A stretch of 64,000 bases of DNA from Tubulanus polymorphus (Eukaryota; Animalia; Nemertea). The notes under the pieces were generated by a model, which made no database searches, had not been told where the DNA came from, and was given only the letters and a program-made list of their open reading frames with translations. The stretch spans positions 1,860,001 through 1,924,000 of the forward strand of contig NC_134029.1 of assembly GCF_964204645.1 (NCBI RefSeq), given 5' to 3'. Of this stretch, positions 1,129-12,632 are shown one piece after another (within the stretch, counting starts at the first letter, position 1; every line of letters starts with the position of its first letter). The position numbers and the translations under genes are program-made.

Positions 1129-3524
1129 CTATATGACACAATTCATTAAGAACTGGATCGGCTCGGAGCGTTTTAAAACTCTCGGTACTTTATACTGGTT
1201 CGCTGATGCTTGTGTCGTCTTCAACATGTATGTCCTCAGTTGTAGGAATGTGCCTTGTTTCACTTGATGAACTCTCATCGCAGAAATACTACCTTTATTA
1301 CGGAATGAACAGTAAACATAAGATATCTTCTGAAGTTCATCGTCGATCTGAAATTTGAAATAGCTTTACGTATGATTGGTCTCATTTTACCAGACAGATT
1401 CATGTATCAAGCAGCACTAACCTGATTCTTTTGTTCTTCTGTTAAAATCTTGTTTCCTTCTCCAGATATTTCGATGAATGTCGTATAAAATGGTGCAATT
1501 TCTTCACTTGCGTTACCTTCAAAAGCCAGAAATAATATTCAACGATATCTGACATACAATTCTGTTTTAAAGATTTCTCTGATAGTGGTTTAGAACTTTA
1601 CCTAAAGCAGTATTGACTGCGATACTTTCAGCGCAGCAGTAATCCACTAGTTTGTTATTCCACTTGTCAACAGCTGACGTCAACGCCTTGTAAAACGTCT
1701 CTTCTGATGTTTTCTCAGCGCGAACATTCAACATCTGGCCGCGTCTAAATGAATCATTTAAAGATGCGATGATGATTTGATTAATTTTCAAGCAAGTTTC
1801 CCATAAAGTTATACAATTCACGCTTTTCATAAACTCCTATTATAGTTTTGAACAGAATTTACCTGTACTGAAATTCTACAACTGGGCAACCGTTGTAGAA
1901 ATCGACGATTTTAACGACATCACCAAATCGATATCTACACAAACCGCTAGTGTTTGTAATGACAAGTTCGTAAGTTGCCTTTAATTCAACTTGTTCCATG
2001 AACAGTGTACCGGGCTGTGGTTTATCAGAATCATCTATAGGTATAAACTCAAAGAACATCGCTGACGGTACGAGGAGATACTTAGTAAGCGCCGACTCGG
2101 GCCATATATTCAAACCAACTAATCCTAAAAAAATATACGAGAAAAACTATATGTCGGTAAACTGCATAAAAGGCTTTATATTTGCCGCTGTAAAGCAACT
2201 ATACCTTCGGTTGCAGCATATATCGGAGAATATATCGGAACATCTTTACATGTTTCATCCGTCAACGCTTTACCATACAAATCAAACGCTCCTGTATTTA
2301 CTGCCAGAATGATATTCAAATCGGGCCAAATACGTTTAGCTATTCCATCAAACCCTTTCTCGAATTCGTTCTCCAACTCGGCCGCTCTCTTCGGATCCGT
2401 CGGCAGAACACCATTCAGTTGATTACGAATTTCTGGATCGATCTCCAGTTTAGGATCAACTCTTCCTAATTTGATATCTTCGATTATTTGTCGGTAGTGA
2501 GTTTTTAGCGCGACGAACATCTGGTAGATGAGCGAGACAAAATTACCTTCGATCATCCCGACTTCTCGATCAGCCAACGCAAATAATAAATGAACGTAAA
2601 GAGCCTCGGGTTCGGTGAGAATTTCAAACCCATACTTAGGCGTTGTGTAAAGATTCAACAAATGTTTCGAGTTTGTGGGTGACGATGAGTTGGGGCCGAT
2701 TAACAATCCACCTTCAGATTTTCTCCAACGCGGCGTGTAGAATATTTTCAACGATTTTTGAAGATTTCGACATCCGGGAAATTGTTTCAATAAGGACGAA
2801 TACATCATCGCCACGCCTTCGACGAAGAATAGTTTCCGTTGAGATTTCACCATCGGTAGAACCTTACTCGAGCCCGACGTGCCTGAAGTGACGGATAGTT
2901 GAACCGGATTCTCGGCTGTCAGAACGTTCTCTTCGCCTTTCTCGATGCGATCGATGTAACTTTTATAATGGTCGTATTCGGTCAACGGATGAAGGCGCAC
3001 GTAATCTTCTTTCGAATGCATATTCTTGAAGTCATAATCGCGTCCATAAACCGTGTCTTGATTGAGTTTGATTCGAGACATCAATAACTCATTCTGGACA
3101 GCGATGAAATTTGTCGTTTTCTTATCGAGTTTCGTTCTGATAATGCGACCGAAACACTGACCGGCTCTCAGCATTATGTATTGATCAATGGCGCTTCGTC
3201 CGCTGTGAAATACAGAAATCTTCCGACGCCAAACATCGAACGAAATGATACCGACCAAAAGCCAAAACAACGCAAAAGCACCTGAAAATATACCACAATT
3301 TGAAACCCTAATTGTCACCAAAATCAAAATACAGTCTAGCACTGCTAGATTATCGGGGAAAGGAAGCTTTACCAACCTGACAATCCATGGAAATGATATT
3401 GATCACTGACACAGCAAAATAATACAATGAAGATTGAGACCGAAAATGATCCAATAGTCATTGAAACACTTAATCTTCTATTCCACAAATTGCTGTAAAT
3501 ACTTTCACTCGCCGGGCACGTCAT
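1129..3524 (-). CDS. GHDC: GH3 domain-containing protein (GH3 acyl-acid amido synthetase-like), 6 coding exons
   Basis: Exons 3524-3377, 3281-2205, 2124-1863, 1744-1602, 1516-1422 and 1347-1129 join in frame at GT-AG introns. GH3 motifs TSGTSG, YAATEG, YRFGD, EKTSE and QYKVPR are present, with a hydrophobic N-terminus. Confidence 0.92.
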
Positions 3525-4159: not shown

Positions 4160-7100
4160 ATGGCGGAATCACTGAGGAGATTAGTAAATATCAGTACATT
4201 TTCCGTCTTACAGGAAAAATTAGAAAAGTGGTTCGACGATTATAAGGTAAGCATTCGATTAACCGTATAATTTTCTAACTTCAACGCTTTAATAGTATGC
4301 AAAATATTCTGAAGATCATTGCAAAAATGTCGAAATTCAACCGGTTGCTATGAAGATTCTTAGGTTTTTCGTTGGGTTAGGTAGTCTGTTCAAATTGTGC
4401 TCAATTCATTCATAATCCTTGCCATACTTAATGCTGTTCGATATTTTATGTTTGTTATATCTGCAAGAAGTGCAATGAAATGGTTATAAGATATGTATTT
4501 TTGAATGTATTTTTTGCCAGCTAGTGCTAATTAGTTTGCTGGTGGTGAGACTGGGAGGGGGTGTGTCAGCCCTCCTCGCTCTTTGGCTCTCTATCTCACC
4601 ACAGCGCAAGCCACATAATCCTGCGAGTTCAGAGTTTTCCAGGGCTTTGATAGGCACGTTTTAATGATATTTTCATGTTTTCTGGCCTTTCTCAAGGCTC
4701 CGATGCCATAACTTCTGACCTGTCACACTGTTCTTTGGGAGGCCTCCAGGCCTATCCTAGAATTGTTTCAAAAGTTTTTAGATTTATAATTACTTGTGAA
4801 TTTGTTATTTCACGAAAGATGCACTGGATTTTTGTGACTTTTTACTTAAAATCATGACTTATCATCAAATATTAATAAATCCTTATTTCTTTCATTATCA
4901 ATAAGATAAAAACCGAATCATGAAAAAGATATTGAAATTTCCTTTAGGCCGTCTGAAAAACTGACATTGTGAAAGTTTGCATTTAGAATTGTTTTTGAAT
5001 CGCTGTCAGTAGTCATAACAACGTTGACAGTATAAGTACGGGATAGGTCTTATTTGTATTATGAGCCACCAATAGTAGAATGAACAGTATTAAGCCTACT
5101 GTAGGCATTGGGGGTTAATTCTTTAATATGACTTTTATTCTTCATGTTTAAACAAAGCAACTTGTTTTTACAGTTCACTTGCTATCAGTGCCATATACTA
5201 GGTCCGGGATTATAAAGCAGTTTAAACATTTATAAACTTGTCGACTTTCCAGTAGCAAATCTTACACGGTTCCTAAATTACCAACTCTCAAGTAGAATGC
5301 TATAATAAAAAATTGAATAACAAAATCTCAGTCGTCCATAGATACTGTCCAAAAAGTCATGTTTCAATTATGTGTTTGCACCTGAAAACATTTGAAAAAA
5401 AACTTTTCCAGCATGTCTGAATGCCCGGGTAAAATTATCTTTTTGTATTTTCATAGTTAAATACGACTGATCAGAATGTAGCTCGTGGTTGTGAGGTTAT
5501 TGAGCTTAACGCTAAAGTTCAAGGCCAGTTATTCCGTATTTTACACCAATGCGCTGCTGAAGGTAAGTTATTGATTATAGAAAGAGCACTGTATAATTTT
5601 TCCCCACATTTTTTATGTCAACTGCTGTCAAAATTTCATACAAATTTCTGAGTTGTACTAGCTAAATGGTTTAGAATCATCAATCACTGGTCTCATCAGT
5701 CCGGGTTCAAGGTTTTGAATCCGGGTGGTGGCGCAGAGTTTCTTGGTCGAAGGTCCTCTAATAATGTCCTGAGTGATGTTCAGTGAGGGATGAACAAACA
5801 AATGTTCATCGTTCCCCAATTTTCTAACTGTATTTAACCGAATCATTCTGATATCATGAATAAAGGTTTTATATATTTGCAATTTGAATTTGAACTTGTT
5901 TTATTACAGGTGGTACGTACGGAGGTGCGAGTATCATTAAATCACGTCTGTTGCCGTGGTTGAGTCAGGGATTGTTGCATACAGGTGGCGTTACCGATGA
6001 TAAACTCATCTCTGACTGCGTCGCGAAGGATAAAGAAATGAACGAAATTCAGGACATGTACGAAACGTCGATTCAACAATTAGAAACTGATCTCAGGGTA
6101 ACTCAAGATGAGGCTAATGTTCTAAAGGCTGAGTAAGTATTGAGTATGAATACGTGAGGGTTTTTGTATATTTCGTTGAAGAAATTTACTCAATATATTT
6201 TTTTTCTTAGATTGGACGATACAAAATGTGAACTGGATCGAGCGAAATCATCTTCTACGAGTGATAAAATGTTCACCGAAGCCGAAATTCGTGAACTTAA
6301 GACGAAGTAAGTTTCCATTTAACCTTCTCTAATACATTTCAGGTATGTTTAGATTATTCAAGATATGCGTTAATGGACATTTGAAGATATTTGCTCTTTG
6401 TAAATTGAAATGTATTAGTATAAACCTGTGAAGTGTTAAATGACACCGGTGAAATGGTCAAGTCTTATATTGCAGGGATTAAGACACACAGTCCATATTT
6501 CTATAACTTACACATTTTGAGGGTATTGCTAGAAATAAATAGTCAAGGTTCAGATTATTACTTCTATGGATATGATCTTATACAGGGGAAGGTTACACTG
6601 TAATGGATCAGGAATGAAAGTTTTATTACATGAACAATTAGAGTAAATTGTGGCTGGGTAATTAGACTGAATTGCTGATCAGTATGGTCTGCGTGAAATT
6701 CATTTCAGACTAGCTGAAAGAGATAATCAAATATCACAGCTGAAATTACGCACTGCTGTGATCTCTGACTATGAACGTTATATAAAAGATTTAAAGAAAG
6801 AAAATGCTTCTTTGTGCGTACGAAACATGTACAGTGCCGGTAAAAGTAGTTACCCGGCTACGGGTATTAACAACAAGTGTACATGTTTGAAACCCGCTGA
6901 AATTGAGCGGTAAGACTCCAACAAAACGACATCATATACGTATACACATATATACTATACTATATATAACTATAATATGTATGTATATCGATGTGAAGGG
7001 TTTGAGTTTCTGGTCACTATCTCCGGCTCCGTCACAAGCAACCAGTAGTTCTAATCAATAGCTACTCGGTCGCTTCTAAACATTTCGCCAAAATACTAGA

Positions 7101-10100
7101 TTCACAGATCTTGCTGAACGCTAGTTTTCTGATCACATGTTGACCTCGAGACTCAGTTTAATTCGCTTATTCTCATCTGATGAAAATAAGGTATAAATCT
7201 GCGGGTGAAATATGAAAAGTTTTCAGTTTTCTCTGATGATTGTATCTTGTTTTCATTCTCTACGCTGAATCAGAGATATCACTATAGTATTGTGTATTGT
7301 GCAATGAATGTTTTAGGCTAGATCTCGCGAACGACGAGAATATTCGCAATCGATCGCGCGTCAACTTACTGGACGATTATGAACGTCAAGTTCGTGTATT
7401 ACGTGAAGAGGTGGCAGTTTTATCGGGCAGACGTTCTGCTCTACGACATATCCCCCCTCCCCCTCCTCCGGCCATTCTAGTTAATGGGTAAGAAGAGCTT
7501 CAACGACTGCCCTGTATGAACGCGATACCTGTCTATAACTCATCCAATGCTGTGGGATTCATAATTTGATTTATGAATGATTAATAGTTTAGGGCAATAA
7601 CACGCACTGGACCCAATTCAATAGTTCATGGTTTAGGCTTAACTTGAAATATGTTCATTTCAATGTTTTAACTCAAATATTAACCAAGAATGTCAAACTG
7701 AGATGAACTGGGTCCTGTAGTCCGAAGCCAAATTTCTTGAATGCTTTAAAGGTTGTCTTTGACATTGAGTTATAGTAAGGTTTCTTTGTACGCAGCAGGA
7801 AAATGCTTTGTTACTGATATTATTAACCCATGTTTTATTGTTGTCTCTCTAACGTGCGTTACTAACCAGGTTAATGGGTGCTATCAGTGAAATACAATGT
7901 CAACAGAGAATCATCGACAATTACAGAAGTGAAATCAGATATCTTAAACATAAAATATCAATCCTACAGGATTCAGATTATTGGTAAGATATCAGGAGCT
8001 CTTACCTTCATCAATCTGGCCTTCATTTCATCTTGATTTAGATCTGATTAAATTATATTTCAATCTGAAAAAGATACCGGCTTCTGTTTTAAGATCTACC
8101 GCTTCATTGTGATTCTACCGGCTGTTTTAGATACTATGAGGAATTAACCTCAATCTTCACTGACTTCAGAATTTGAACAAATGAATAAAGGATTTTTCAT
8201 TCTGTGTGGTACAAAATCATTCCAGTTCTAACTAACTACTTATTAAGTGTATTATTTGGTTATTCTAACCTATCATTAACTTATAACTATTTATTATCAT
8301 TATCAAACTAACTCCTTTTTTAATCTCAATTATTTAGCGCTTGTAGTTTTAGTTATTGAAATTTATTTGCGAAATTGTCATCAAATTCATTGAGAAATTC
8401 AAAGATTCACGATCCAGTTCCACAATTTTAGGGTTTGTCTCAACTGAAACCTCAGGATCTGAAGATCAGTTAGAACAGTGGAACAAACTGGTTCCTGAGT
8501 GTGGAACTGGATCTATCATTGATTCTGTTTGATACAATTATGATATTTTTATGTTAGGTCTGAGGCTCCGTTGGATGAAGTAACTCCACGCGCTCTATCT
8601 CGTGTTGGTTCTCCGTTATCGTCTGAAGACCCGACTCAGCGATACAGACAACAGAATCTCATCTCGAGATTTAACGACATGTATTCGATTAATCGTATCA
8701 ATGCTATGGAAACTCTGAGAACTTACTCTCAAGACCACGAGAATAATCAGAAAATAGTCTTCGCTGCTCTAACGGTAAAACCTATTAGCACTTTACCATG
8801 AATGAATGGAAAATCATTAGACATTGAATTTCTGTAAATATTGAATCAAATTGATCAGAATGAATGGATTGTGAATTAGTATTTGTTTTTAAATCTGGAA
8901 TGTTGTTCATTGAGTTACCAGTACTACGATCGTATGGTATAAGCTGAACACTTATTCCAGAGTGTAATGAAGAGTTTTCCGATAAATTTTCACACATTCA
9001 TTTATTGAAGTGCTCTGTACAGCAGTGGGGTATAACGAAGGAAGGTGCCTGGGTATTTCATTTGTAGTAAATTTTAGTCAAAGAGATATGTATGACTTTA
9101 ACGTTTGCAGCCGGGTTCAATTCATTTAGTTGACATCGACAAAAGACGAACCTACTGATTTTCATTAATTGCTGTATGGTCTATTCAAACATTCACAAGA
9201 CGTGTTATTTGCATGTTCATTGAAATATCTATGAATGACATGCTATCTATAGTTGGTCGAGTGCCAGAAATTCCATGAATTCAAATAACTACGGCAAAGA
9301 TTGTCGTGTCTAATACATAAAGATTTACACATCGAAATCAAATATTTGTACATTTTCATAATCAATTTTATGATTGAGAATACTCTGGTTTGTGTACAAC
9401 ATGAAATTGAATTTCTAAATTCAGTTCCTATTGTCATTAATAGAAATGTTGGTTGAGTTACAACTACCAGTAATTGAGTCAGTTAAGAACATCCTTGAAA
9501 ATGTTTTACTATTTCTGATCAATTCACAGTCCTCTGTGATAATCAACCAAAATGAACAACTGTAATGTAAAAAGTATTGCCTTCCCTCCGATTAAAACTT
9601 GATTTGTTTTCACTTAACGATGAACAAACCTATTTAAATGATTATAACTGTGTTGTTGAATCCAGTTTTTGATTTAGATTATCGCATGTTGTTTTCATAG
9701 GAAGCGTTTAATGCGGCTAAAATGGGATTCCGTCAACACAAGATGAAAGTTCGATCAAGTTTGGCATTGACTCACCTCGGTCCGAGTACGCTGGAAGAAG
9801 CCGTCCAAAGCCACATCAATAGACATCCCGATAGTTACGATTTAGCTGAACTGATATCTGTATGTATCAAATATAATCATCAGCTTTGATTTTAAAGTAT
9901 GAAAAGACAATTATTTTCTCATTGTGATATATGTATATTATATATTTGTTTTTGCAGGCTGTTATCAGAAACTTGAATCATAACCCGCGTATATATCTAC
10001 CGGTTGATGCCTCGTATTCATTGATTCGTCCGTTTATTAGTGAAGCGTGTCAGATCTCGTGGGGAATGTCAGCTCTAGCTCATCCTCTCGACGTTGCCAT

Positions 10101-12632
10101 TACCTCTGAAGCTGAACTATTTGACGACACCAAGTAAGTTTTATCATCGAAAAATTATTATCTGATCATTTTCTAGTACCCTCTTCGAAAAATACCAAAC
10201 TTACAACAATCAACCTTTACAAGCTTTCCCAACTCAATCAACAAATTAGCAAAGCCATAAGCCCTAAATAATGAAACAAATACAACTTCAATATTTTCAG
10301 TGACGGGACCCATATCCTTCTGGTTTTGTACACTGAGCCTCCGGTCCTCACCCGGGTAAACTTTTCAATGTGTGATACACTATTTTTGCAGATATCGTCG
10401 AAGCTATGATTCTGAATTCACGGCTCCTCTCGTTGATCATCACGTCTGGCCCGCTCTCGTACAAGCTGGTCATACTATCGTGAAGGGTGAGGCTGTGACA
10501 AGAAGAGGTGCTTCTCTGGTAGGTTCACTAGACTTCACTCTTTTTCGAAGTGCATGAAATGTTTTATTTTGAGGCTGCATGTATTTATATGTTCTTCAAC
10601 TTCATTCAATGCACAAATTTCAATGAAAGTTTGAACCCTTGTACGTGAATTCTGCAGCGCAGATCTATCATGTTTCAGCGTAGATATTAAGTCGTTAATT
10701 CGGTGTCAATACGAAAGGTAAACAATTAATCGACTGTTTATTTATCTGGCATGCTTTCCTAAATACTAAATCAACACCAAACACACAAAGCTTTTTGTTC
10801 AAGTTTTCATAATTGAGAACATTTTGCTTCTGTATTAATGAAAGCGTGCCAGTTAGTAACACCAGTCATTCTCTATGGCTGCGTGCCATTCAGCTAACAT
10901 CGAGTCCTTTTACACTGAAGCGGCACTTTTTAGTTGGTAACTTCATTTATATTTCTTGTGTGTTTCTTATTTAGATACAGCCGTTTTCACACGTTGTAAA
11001 GTGTATCGACTGCTATCAATTTCTATCAAACTCGACTACACTGAAAAGAGTAGAACTGATCTATAATCACAGGGCTGGTTCTGATGGAATATACTCTGGT
11101 TTGTTGAATATTCCAGGCATTTTCTGTTCAAAATAATGCACCCTGAAGAGAATTCTAGATTTAGTAGGTTCAATCAAAACCTACCTAGGTTCGGTTTACT
11201 CTTTTACGTTTGTAGAGTTTTTAACTCGCTAGCTATATTGCATACCTATCTATCATTTAGTATTTCCTTCCATCTCTAACAGCATACATCCAGAAGTAGA
11301 AGCAAGAGTCCTGTGCGATCATTGAGTCCATCCCGGGCTGCCGCGACCCTGGCTAGAGTACGTGCCCGTAGTCGCTCCCCGAGCCCTAGACGGGCCGTGA
11401 GCCCTATCAATCTCAGTACAAACGGTGGAAGGAGCACCCCTACAGGTAAACATTGAAAAAAAAAAAACATATAATAATTTCAGTCAAAACTCATTAGATT
11501 CAAATCATTTGATAAATTCATATTGATGTACGCAATTCACTGTGCAGCAGGAAGTAGTTCTATTTCTAGTAGTAAGTGTTTAATTCACCTCCTTTTTAAA
11601 CGGCTCCATCTTCAATGGCTCCTTCTTCAATGGCTCCCTCATCAATGGCTCCCTCATCAATGGCTCCTTTATCAATGGCTCCCTCTTCAACGGCTCCCTC
11701 TTCCACCTCATCAATGGCTCCCTCTTCAGCTCCTTGATGCGTCAACTACTATTCATCTTTGTAATCATCGCTTCTAATTATTTCCCTCAATCTTTCCCTT
11801 TAGTAGAATTTCAGAACTAATTTCAAAGTTTATCATCGTTTGAAAAACATAAAAATGTATGATGTTGTAGGTTCCCATCTTCATCCATCCTCAGCAGCAG
11901 CAGTTCGTAGTGGTACAGCACGTACCAGTTCACGAGCTGCTCCTAGTACTGTACCACCTTCGAGCTTACGAAGTACCGCCCTTCCATCCTCATTGTTCTC
12001 AGATGATGAAGGTATCAATCTTATCGATCCCGCTTTTATCATTTAGCGTCACCCCAACAATATTTTACATCCTTATCTAAGCTCGCTGCGTGACAACTTT
12101 ACATATTCAGCATTGATTTCTAATTTTGAATGTAGGTTAATGATTAGTTTAAGACTATGCTACTCAACCAGTTCATCCTCAAGGTTCATCATCACATTTC
12201 AGAAATTAATCGCTGCCCTCCTCACTAACAGTAATATAAGCTAGGTTATAGCACTAACTCGTAAAGAGAAGCTTTCTTAATGCATTCATATTTTGATGAT
12301 GATTTTATATTACAAACGCATGGTATCATTTATTCCTAAAACTCTGGACCAGGTTCCATAGTTATAAGTTAGAATTCACTTTACGTTTAAATTAGTTCCT
12401 TTCCACTGTTTTCACTCTAGATACAAGTCTGTTAACTGAGAATCATGGAACTGACTCCAGTATTATGCATGAAATCTCTTTTATCATGTTGTACACATGG
12501 ATGTTTTTGCATGTTTTGAAAATTAAGTCATGAATTAATAAAAGACTCTTGTCACCAATGATAACTAATTATTTATGTTGCGGTTGTGTTTCAGGTGCCC
12601 GATCAACTCGCAGTAGTTTACGTACATTCTAA
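4160..12632 (+). CDS. SPATA18: Mitochondria-eating protein (Mieap/SPATA18), multi-exon, with candidate alternative internal and terminal exons
   Basis: Exons 4160-4246 ([18 protein letters not shown]), 5457-5562 ([14 protein letters not shown]), 5910-6132 (IKSRLLPWL), 6211-6306, tandem exons 6709-6909/7317-7487/7870-7983, 8558-8774, 9701-9859, 9958-10133, 10392-10518 ([28 protein letters not shown]), 11283-11445 (RSRSKSP-rich) and terminal exons 11871-12046 and/or 12595-12632. The N- and C-terminal motifs match SPATA18. Confidence 0.92.
7606..7718. mobile_element. Short palindromic MITE-like element (CCAGTTC-terminal family)
   Basis: Terminal inverted repeats ACTGGACCCAATTCA ... TGAACTGGGTCCTGT. 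Related copies at 8411-8513, 12344-12460, and partial ones near 20875-20949, 21282-21356 and 22518. Confidence 0.55.
8411..8513. mobile_element. Short palindromic MITE-like element (same family as 7606-7718)
   Basis: Perfect 14-bp terminal inverted repeat GATCCAGTTCCACA ... TGTGGAACTGGATC. Confidence 0.6.
11600..11728 (+). repeat. 15-bp minisatellite, consensus ATGGCTCCCTC(A/T)TCA, about 7-8 degenerate units
   Basis: Directly visible tandem units; they translate as [10 protein letters not shown] repeats. Confidence 0.85.
12344..12460. mobile_element. Short palindromic MITE-like element (same family as 7606-7718)
   Basis: Imperfect terminal inverted repeats CTGGACCAGGTTCCAT ... ATGGAACTGACTCCAG. 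Confidence 0.5.

What the first reader, a model, noticed from the sequence alone, without database searches (positions are those of the whole stretch)
6709..7983. Three tandem homologous exons in the Mieap coiled coil: candidate mutually exclusive exon cluster
Seen: exons A 6709-6909 (201 nt), B 7317-7487 (171 nt) and C 7870-7983 (114 nt) are each stop-free, phase 2-2, a multiple of 3 long, and end in a GTAAGA donor. They align from the acceptor: [36 protein letters not shown]; [36 protein letters not shown]; [33 protein letters not shown] (3 residues shorter). Their tails differ: Cys-containing in A, poly-Pro in B, short in C. From memory, vertebrate SPATA18 has one such DY..Q.R.L.EE.AVLS motif, closest to B. 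Inference: exon triplication produced either swappable coiled-coil modules or a lengthened coil. The ORF track finds only B.
Basis: partly seen in the sequence, partly recalled or inferred. Interest (0 to 1): 0.8.

Follow-up and report, generated by a model that had tools for sequence, protein, structure and literature searches.

The report
Tandem duplicated coiled-coil exons in Mieap
The three look-alike exons in this ribbon-worm Mieap/SPATA18 gene are real, ancient tandem duplicates, but the only RNA evidence and the public gene model use the middle one alone, and related animals include such exons singly or together, so they are not strictly swapped one for another.

Summary
A (6709-6909), B (7317-7487) and C (7870-7983) are stop-free, phase 2-2 and a multiple of 3 long. 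Each has an AG acceptor, and they carry the only three GGTAAGA heptamers in the gene. Their homology is not chance. Scanned against every stop-free stretch of the window, B, and real exons from other species, pick B, A and C as the top hits.

The gene is the Mieap/SPATA18 orthologue of Tubulanus polymorphus. The RefSeq protein XP_074651373.1 matches exons 1-4, B and 6-8 exactly and lacks A and C.

The one spliced RNA contig joins 6306>7317 and 7487>8558, so it carries B only. No junction touches A or C.

RefSeq isoforms of relatives (the nemertean Lineus, the brachiopod Lingula, many molluscs) carry two homologous tandem exons at exactly this site. They occur as both, first only or second only; in Lingula the two are swapped. 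So this is a conserved array of duplicated cassette exons, not a strict mutually exclusive cluster.

A and C keep their frame, donors and heptad core, but their tree branches are about five times the median. They are probably rarely or tissue-specifically used exons (about 0.55). Recently dead copies are the main rival (about 0.3).

This is a new member of a known kind, of moderate interest. The scan has not noted it on other DNA.

The parts
4160..4246 (+). Mieap coding exon 1 (start codon at 4160)
   Evidence: Exact match to residues 1-29 of RefSeq protein P0200. The loose end of an X2 contig joins these letters to about 5457.
5457..5562 (+). exon 2
   Evidence: Exact match to P0200. AG acceptor and GTAAGT donor.
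5910..6132 (+). exon 3 (first coiled coil)
   Evidence: Exact match to P0200. RNA joint 6132>6211.
6211..6306 (+). exon 4, the constitutive exon upstream of the array
   Evidence: RNA joints 6132>6211 and 6306>7317. Exact match to P0200.
6709..6909 (+). Candidate exon A: a divergent homologue of B. It is unannotated and no splice junction was seen.
   Evidence: AG acceptor, G|GTAAGA donor, 66 open codons, phase 2-2. It is the best non-self hit of B. It scores 64-75 against mollusc second exons and 68 against Lineus exon 1. It is covered only by low-depth unspliced contigs. It is absent from P0200.
7317..7487 (+). Exon B: the expressed, annotated member and the orthologue of Lineus exon 2 and the Lingula B-like exon
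   Evidence: RNA joints 6306>7317 and 7487>8558 at depth 40.8. Exact match to P0200. It groups with Lineus exon 2 at 97/85 support.
7870..7983 (+). Candidate exon C: the most divergent homologue. It is unannotated, with no RNA coverage.
   Evidence: AG acceptor, G|GTAAGA donor, 37 open codons, phase 2-2. It is the second-best non-self hit of B. Its best outside match is Lineus exon 1, at 59. Depth is about 0 in X2, X3 and X4. It has the same length (114 nt) and the same place downstream of B as the Lingula alternative exon.
8558..8774 (+). exon 6 (linker and start of the MIEAP domain), the constitutive exon downstream of the array
   Evidence: RNA joints 7487>8558 and 8774>9701. PF16026 hit. 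Exact match to P0200.
9701..9859 (+). exon 7 (MIEAP domain)
   Evidence: RNA joints. PF16026 hit.
9958..10133 (+). exon 8 (MIEAP domain)
   Evidence: RNA joint 9859>9958. PF16026 hit, E = 5e-10.
10392..10519 (+). exon 9 (end of the MIEAP domain)
   Evidence: The X2 contig's loose end beyond 10133 carries these letters and stops at 10519. P0200 continues from here into a downstream exon. PF16026 hit at 48.7 bits.
11283..11445 (+). exon 10 (Ser/Arg-rich tail); boundaries approximate
   Evidence: tblastn of P0200 onto the window.
12591..12629 (+). last coding exon; boundaries approximate
   Evidence: tblastn of P0200 onto the window.

Best explanation
The window holds the Mieap/SPATA18 orthologue of the nemertean Tubulanus polymorphus. 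Between constitutive exons 4 and 6 lies an array of three tandemly duplicated exons. Each encodes one copy of the second coiled-coil module (heptad core ...D.Y....I/V..L....L) followed by a different disordered tail.

The array is old. Spiralian relatives have two or three homologous exons at the same place and splice them as independent in-frame cassettes: both, either one, and rarely none.

In Tubulanus, B is the default exon. A and C are fast-evolving but still splice-competent members. They are most likely included only rarely or in tissues or stages not sampled, either beside B (a longer coil) or in its place. Because every member is phase 2-2 and a multiple of 3, any combination stays in frame.

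The inferred effect is to change the number and kind of coiled-coil modules, and the attached linker, in a protein whose coiled-coil region mediates partner binding, mitochondrial targeting and condensate formation.

Shown: the homology, the B-only transcript, and the isoform patterns of relatives. Inferred: present-day use of A and C, and the functional effect.
For: Gene identity:
- PF16026 hits in exons 6-9.
- RefSeq XP_074651373.1 (P0200) matches exons 1-4, B and 6-8 exactly, and its contig length equals that of the window's contig C5.

Homology of A, B and C:
- Shuffle tests.
- B's two best non-self hits, of 1148 stretches.
- Top three of 2158 stretches for foreign exons.
- All three fit one alignment template.

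Relatives:
- Lingula X3 swaps the B-like exon for a 114-nt homologous exon between identical flanks.
- Among the 12 Lineus isoforms, most have exons 1+2, X4 has only exon 2 and X6 only exon 1.
- Crassostrea, Mytilus, Haliotis, Babylonia, Pomacea, Littorina and Dreissena show both, first-only and second-only isoforms.
- Lineus has a third, unannotated candidate exon downstream of exon 2, with an AG acceptor and a G|GTAAGA donor.

Constraint on A and C:
- Open frames of 66 and 37 codons, where only 2.4% and 10.9% of window frames of those lengths are stop-free.
- The only three GGTAAGA heptamers in the gene sit at the three donors.
- Third codon positions are at chance identity (0.26-0.31), while first and second positions keep 0.29-0.58 identity (0.45-0.58 between A and B).
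- The a/d heptad positions (I/L, Y, I/V, L, I/V/N, L) are kept in all three, read.
- A is closer to mollusc second exons and to Lineus exon 1 (64-75) than to its neighbour B (46), which argues for an old origin.
Against: There is no RNA evidence for A or C:
- The spliced X2 contig (depth 40.8) skips both.
- A is covered only by unspliced low-depth contigs no deeper than the surrounding intron, and contigs in X3 and X4 read through A's donor.
- C has essentially no coverage.
- RefSeq lists a single B-only isoform.

Other points against:
- A and C have terminal branches of 1.62 and 1.85 against a median of 0.33, which is consistent with relaxed constraint.
- C has a weak polypyrimidine tract.
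- Only one RNA-like run, of unknown tissue, was available, and only as contigs, which drop rare isoforms.
- The codon-position contrast rests on fewer than 40 codons per pair.
Confidence: 0.55

Rival explanations
1. A and C are dead or dying duplicates (pseudo-exons). They descend from once-used cassette exons but are no longer spliced in Tubulanus, and only B is functional.
For: B-only spliced contig and B-only RefSeq model. No coverage of C, and unspliced read-through of A's donor. Branches about five times the median. Weak acceptor tract for C.
Against: - Both frames are open (chance 2.4% and 10.9%) and both keep an AG acceptor and the exact G|GTAAGA donor.
- The heptad core residues are retained.
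- Third codon positions look saturated while first and second do not.

Long neutral decay should have erased these features, so the death would have to be recent.
Confidence: 0.3
2. The array is a strict mutually exclusive exon cluster: every mRNA carries exactly one of A, B or C, chosen by tissue.
For: Shared phase, homology and tandem order. The Lingula annotated isoforms carry either the B-like exon or the alternative exon, never both. The Tubulanus transcript has exactly one member.
Against: - In Lineus, the closest relative sampled, and in many molluscs, most or many isoforms carry two homologous exons together.
- Double inclusion stays in frame, so there is no NMD filter.
- The introns are 407 and 382 nt, so there is no steric block.
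- All sites are GT-AG.
- The best intronic inverted repeats are 19 nt at 79-84%.
- No A-only or C-only transcript has been seen.
Confidence: 0.12
3. The resemblance is a chance effect of coiled-coil composition, and A and C are ordinary intron sequence.
For: Pairwise identities are low: 40% over 25 aa for A-B and about 26% for B-C. tblastn E-values within the window are only 0.05-0.7.
Against: - B's two best non-self hits, of 1148 stretches, are its two neighbours, on the same strand and in the same phase.
- Independent exons from five other species pick the same three stretches.
- The alignment runs in register from the acceptor.
- The donor heptamers are identical.
Confidence: 0.03

Closest known systems
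Lineus longissimus mitochondria-eating protein-like, RefSeq isoforms X1-X12 (XP_064636264 to XP_064636276)
   Same: Same phylum, same gene, and the same site between the ...EIREL+.K exon and the ...SPL..DD exon. Two homologous tandem coiled-coil exons are annotated, and the second is the orthologue of window exon B (97/85 support). A third candidate copy lies downstream with a G|GTAAGA donor.
   Different: In Lineus both exons are included in most isoforms, and each can be skipped (X4, X6). In Tubulanus only B is seen. Orthology of A and C to Lineus exons 1 and 3 is unresolved: position says A=1 and C=3, while sequence puts C nearest to exon 1.
Lingula anatina mitochondria-eating protein isoforms X1/X2 versus X3
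   Same: An annotated one-for-one swap of the B-like exon (195 nt, donor GG|GTAAGA) for a homologous 114-nt exon lying downstream of it. Both are phase 2-2. The alternative exon has the same length and relative position as window C.
   Different: Only two members are seen, and no A-like exon lies upstream of the B-like one. The Lingula alternative exon lacks the D.Y motif that C keeps, and by sequence it is nearer to A (41) than to C (30).
Mollusc mitochondria-eating protein-like isoform sets (Crassostrea, Mytilus, Haliotis, Babylonia, Pomacea, Littorina, Dreissena)
   Same: Two tandem homologous exons at the same site, with isoforms carrying both, only the first or only the second. Window A scores highest against the mollusc second exon (64-75).
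   Different: Two members, not three, and both are well conserved among molluscs. In Tubulanus A and C sit on long branches.
Classical tandem-duplicated mutually exclusive exons (SNAP25 exon 5a/5b, arthropod Mhc, human tandem duplicated exon substitutions; PMC2581893, PMC2257972, PMC9741552)
   Same: Origin by tandem exon duplication, a preserved phase, and homologous peptide modules that differ in detail.
   Different: Those events are substitutions of near equal-length exons, with exactly one included. Here the lengths differ (201, 171 and 114 nt), co-inclusion is in frame and is annotated in relatives, and no mechanism enforcing exclusivity is visible.
Vertebrate Mieap/SPATA18
   Same: Same domain order: N-terminal region, two coiled coils with disordered linkers, and the MIEAP domain. 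The B motif is conserved. The coiled-coil region is needed for NIX binding and mitochondrial targeting, and Mieap forms condensates (PMC3022033, PMC10845071).
   Different: The bat and bird orthologues examined show a single copy of the motif, and masking it leaves no second copy. No tandem array was seen there.

Membership tests
Mieap/SPATA18 (Pfam PF16026 MIEAP) | C-terminal MIEAP domain | tested here: met
   Exons at 8558, 9701, 9958 and 10392 hit PF16026 piecewise, together covering profile positions 1-195.
Mieap/SPATA18 (Pfam PF16026 MIEAP) | Orthology to named Mieap proteins over the whole length, including the N-terminal region and coiled coils | tested here: met
   RefSeq 'mitochondria-eating protein-like [Tubulanus polymorphus]' matches the window's exons exactly. 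It is 59% identical to Lingula Mieap over 97% of its length.
Tandem duplicated alternative (cassette) exon array | Adjacent exons homologous to each other | tested here: met
Tandem duplicated alternative (cassette) exon array | Each member has usable splice sites and keeps the reading frame, alone or in combination | tested here: met
   AG acceptors, G|GTAAGA donors, phase 2-2, lengths 201, 171 and 114 nt.
Tandem duplicated alternative (cassette) exon array | Transcripts that include or skip individual members | tested here: inconclusive
   Met in relatives through RefSeq isoforms. In this species only B inclusion is seen, in one RNA-like run held as contigs.
Mutually exclusive exon (MXE) cluster | Exactly one member of the cluster in every mature mRNA | tested here: inconclusive
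But Lineus and the molluscs have isoforms with two members together.
Mutually exclusive exon (MXE) cluster | A mechanism that enforces exclusivity: an intron too short to splice, U2/U12 incompatibility, a frameshift with NMD on double inclusion, or docking/selector RNA pairing | tested here: not met
   The introns between members are 407 and 382 nt. All sites are GT-AG. All lengths are multiples of 3. The best inverted repeats between the introns are 19 nt at 79-84% complementarity. Conservation of any pairing could not be tested.
Mutually exclusive exon (MXE) cluster | Members of equal or near-equal length that encode interchangeable segments | tested here: not met
   The first 35 or so residues correspond, but total lengths are 67, 57 and 38 codons with unrelated tails.

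The most novel reading that the evidence does not exclude
Spiralian Mieap genes carry a conserved array of two or three tandem coiled-coil exons. Combinatorial inclusion sets the number and type of coiled-coil modules, and so the valency or partner choice, of a mitochondrial condensate scaffold. In Tubulanus the unannotated exons A and C would be germline-, cilia- or stage-specific members of this array. This would be a natural splicing dial on a phase-separating protein, and the searched literature does not describe it.
Probability: 0.4. Interest if true: 0.55.

Novelty: new member of a known kind. Interest (0 to 1): 0.4.

Why it matters
Mieap is a p53-induced protein. Its coiled-coil and disordered region drives condensate formation and mitochondrial targeting (PMC10845071, PMC3022033). 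An array of duplicated coiled-coil exons shared by nemerteans, brachiopods and molluscs, and spliced in several combinations, would be a natural experiment in how module number and type affect the protein's behaviour.

For annotation, it shows that the single public model of this gene probably misses two exon candidates. It also points to a third, unannotated candidate exon in Lineus.

It is not a new kind of mechanism. Tandem exon duplication with alternative inclusion is well known, and automatic isoform models of relatives already contain the pattern.

Tried and rejected
- Word search with exon B alone found nothing, because the length filter excludes full-length proteins.
- The two other MIEAP-domain loci of the same genome (C2 at 18.70 Mb, C5 at 22.01 Mb) have no B-, A- or C-like exon within 30 kb, so they do not explain A or C.
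- Four orthologue look-ups gave nothing usable: P0040, P0030 and P0173 had no genomic record, and P0001 sits on a contig of only 1.3 kb.
- The loose-end letters of X3 and X4 contigs at 6411 and 7178 do not occur in the window, so they are not splices to A, B or C.
- An RNA-duplex scan for docking/selector pairing first timed out. Then it gave only a meaningless full-length duplex and was dropped. I relied on the inverted-repeat scan instead.
- A fourth array member was sought with exons of six species as queries, and none was found.
- I assigned A and C to particular exon types by tree. With 38 columns and long branches this is unresolved.
- I found no paper describing tandem or mutually exclusive exons in Mieap/SPATA18.
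Exons were searched one by one by reference, and full-length comparisons used database proteins returned by the searches.
Full report
OBSERVATION. The three segments are as described. A is 6709-6909 (201 nt), B is 7317-7487 (171 nt) and C is 7870-7983 (114 nt). Each follows an AG, is open in the frame inherited from the upstream exon (phase 2-2), is a multiple of 3 long, and is followed by G|GTAAGA. Between 4000 and 11500 the heptamer GGTAAGA occurs exactly three times, at these three donors. The whole window has seven on this strand.

GENE AND ORGANISM. The downstream exons carry the Pfam MIEAP domain PF16026. A search with the last domain exon recovered Mieap orthologues. A second search, with the Lingula protein as query, returned RefSeq XP_074651373.1, 'mitochondria-eating protein-like [Tubulanus polymorphus]'. 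Its contig length (24,873,478) equals that of the window's contig. That 520-aa protein contains the window's exons 1-4, B and 6-8 letter for letter, and contains neither A nor C. The window is therefore the Mieap/SPATA18 gene of this palaeonemertean, and the public model is B-only with a single isoform. I did not build or search a joined spliced model. Exons were searched one at a time by reference, and full-length comparisons used proteins that the searches returned.

RNA EVIDENCE. No run on record as RNA holds the stretch. Of the four runs that hold it, X1 is DNA-like (share 0.90). X2 contains a 1172-nt contig at depth 40.8 with five GT..AG joints: 6132>6211, 6306>7317, 7487>8558, 8774>9701 and 9859>9958. 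This is a spliced mRNA that goes from exon 4 straight to B and from B straight to exon 6.

No joint enters or leaves A or C in any run. A is covered in X2 only by an unspliced contig (6682-6920, depth 3.8), no deeper than the intron around it. X3 and X4 have contigs starting inside A (6788) and running through its donor into the intron. C has essentially no coverage. X3 and X4 show no splice joint anywhere in the gene, and their kind is unknown, so they say little about splicing. Contigs drop rare isoforms and the tissue is unknown, so this shows that B is the main form, not that A and C are never used. Constitutive A+B+C inclusion is refuted for this sample.

HOMOLOGY. Several tests agree.
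- Against composition-preserving shuffles, the pairwise local scores are z = 5.6-7 for A-B, 5.7 for B-C and 3.2 for A-C.
- Against an empirical null of all 1148 stop-free stretches of at least 30 aa in six frames of the window, B's two best non-self hits are A (46) and C (44), with the next at 38. The best non-self hit of both A and C is B.
- Independently, expressed exons of Lineus, Crassostrea, Haliotis and Paralvinella, scanned over 2158 stretches, return B, A and C as the top three. They score 51-69 for A and 39-59 for C, against a background of at most about 40. A Pomacea exon ranks A first (71) and B second, with C fourth.
- A and B align without offset from the acceptor; C needs one 3-residue gap.
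Chance resemblance is excluded.

RELATIVES.
- Lingula anatina. Isoforms X1 and X2 carry a B-like exon. X3 replaces it, between identical flanks, with a shorter homologous exon. In the Lingula locus the B-like exon (195 nt, ending ...AATGG|GTAAGA like window B) is followed 902 nt later by the alternative exon (114 nt, the length of window C). Both are phase 2-2.
- Lineus longissimus, a nemertean with 12 isoforms. Two homologous exons lie at this site. Ten isoforms carry both, X4 carries only the second and X6 only the first.
- Molluscs. Crassostrea, Mytilus, Haliotis, Babylonia, Pomacea, Littorina and Dreissena have isoforms with both exons, only the first or only the second. One Haliotis isoform has neither.
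- A third Lineus candidate. The Lineus locus also holds an unannotated candidate exon downstream of the second one (L018:7845-7979, 135 nt, AG acceptor, G|GTAAGA donor). It resembles the Lingula alternative exon and the single exon used in the Bugula and Owenia models.
- Deuterostomes. The hemichordate proteins each show one such segment. The bat and bird orthologues have one motif copy, and masking it leaves no second.
The array is therefore old within Spiralia, and its members behave as independent in-frame cassettes. A pure swap is annotated only in Lingula.

ORTHOLOGY OF THE MEMBERS. A 38-column tree pairs Tubulanus B with Lineus exon 2 (97/85 support), next to the Lingula B-like exon. It also groups the mollusc second exons with the Lingula, Owenia, Bugula and Lineus-third type (88/87). 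A and C have terminal branches of 1.62 and 1.85 against a median of 0.33, and their placement is unsure. C pairs weakly with Lineus exon 1 (90/29), and A is unresolved. By raw score, A is nearest to the mollusc second exons (64-75) and to Lineus exon 1 (68), rather than to its neighbour B (46). C is nearest to Lineus exon 1 (59). This argues that A is not a recent copy of B.

ARE A AND C ALIVE? Evidence for:
- Only 2.4% of 66-codon frames and 10.9% of 37-codon frames in the window are stop-free.
- Both keep an AG acceptor and the exact donor heptamer.
- Third codon positions between copies are at chance identity (0.26-0.31), while first and second positions keep 0.29-0.58 identity (0.45-0.58 between A and B).
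- The a/d heptad positions of the core are hydrophobic in all three: I,Y,I,L,N,L in A; L,Y,V,L,V,L in B; I,Y,I,L,I,L in C (read).
- The one DNA variant inside C, and the two inside B, are synonymous in frame, but the numbers are far too small to weigh.
Evidence against:
- No junction reads, and no RefSeq isoform.
- Long branches.
- A poor pyrimidine tract before C.
I put live but minor or tissue-restricted use at about 0.55, recently dead copies at about 0.3 and strict mutual exclusivity at about 0.12.

MUTUAL EXCLUSIVITY. None of the known enforcing mechanisms is evident. The introns between members are 407 and 382 nt, all sites are GT-AG, and double or triple inclusion stays in frame. The best complementary intron segments are 19 nt at 79-84%. 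Together with co-inclusion in Lineus and the molluscs, the cassette-array reading fits better than an MXE cluster.

LIKELY FUNCTION (inferred). In human Mieap the coiled-coil region is required for NIX binding and mitochondrial targeting (PMC3022033). The coiled coils with their flanking disordered regions underlie condensate formation (PMC10845071). Each array member supplies one coiled-coil module plus a distinct tail: Cys-containing in A, poly-Pro in B, short and acidic in C. Splicing choice would then change module number and linker chemistry. I found no paper describing this array.

LIMITS. One RNA-like run was available, of unknown tissue and held only as contigs. RefSeq isoforms of relatives are automatic models whose transcript support I could not inspect. 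No palaeonemertean genome besides this one was reachable, so constraint on A and C could not be measured directly.

Noticed in passing
window 7028-7101 (intron between A and B): An X2 contig carries nine T>C changes in 74 nt and no other kind of change there, while X3 and X4 contigs over the same place match the reference. One-directional clustered changes look like A-to-I hyper-editing of an antisense transcript (T>C on + equals A>G on -), though an allele cannot be excluded. X3 and X4 also have contigs over 6788-7110/7178 although they lack the Mieap exons, which hints at a separate transcript or a DNA-like library.
   Followed up: partly
L018:7845-7979 (Lineus longissimus Mieap locus): An unannotated third homologous candidate exon (135 nt, phase-compatible, AG acceptor, G|GTAAGA donor) lies between the second array exon and the next constitutive exon. 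It is absent from all 12 RefSeq isoforms and is most similar to the oyster second exon and to the Bugula and Lingula-alternative type.
   Followed up: partly
window 7478-7488 and 7870-7880: The last coding letters of B plus its donor, and the first letters of C, share the 10-mer GTTAATGGGT, in different reading frames. A few such 10-mers are expected by chance in 2.5 kb, and no duplication model explains the placement, so it is probably coincidence.
   Followed up: no
window 6411-6607 (intron 4): The DNA-like run X1 breaks into contigs here, with doubled depth and a variant contig (SNPs, a TATA insertion). X3 and X4 have an identical 99-letter loose end at 6411 that is not in the window. This is probably a heterozygous insertion or structural variant.
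   Followed up: partly
window 9076: All four runs carry 7 extra letters (GTTCCGC) after 9076 relative to the window, in the intron between exons 6 and 7. This is either a small assembly omission or a minority allele in the reference.
   Followed up: no
window 10519-12629: The open frame after exon 9 runs on to a stop at 10557, but the RefSeq protein splices at 10519 into a Ser/Arg-rich exon (about 11283-11445) and a short last exon (about 12591-12629). The RNA contig also ends exactly at 10519.
   Followed up: partly
G000:C2:18699391-18707402 and G000:C5:22010157-22010420: The genome has two further MIEAP-domain loci, one scoring higher against Pfam than this gene. Neither has a recognisable B-like coiled-coil exon within 30 kb.
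   Followed up: partly
window 2176-3375, minus strand: A 399-codon open frame lies upstream of Mieap on the opposite strand. From memory its sequence looks like a GH3-domain protein, but I did not test this. In Lingula and Lineus the upstream neighbour is a sarcoglycan gene instead.
   Followed up: no
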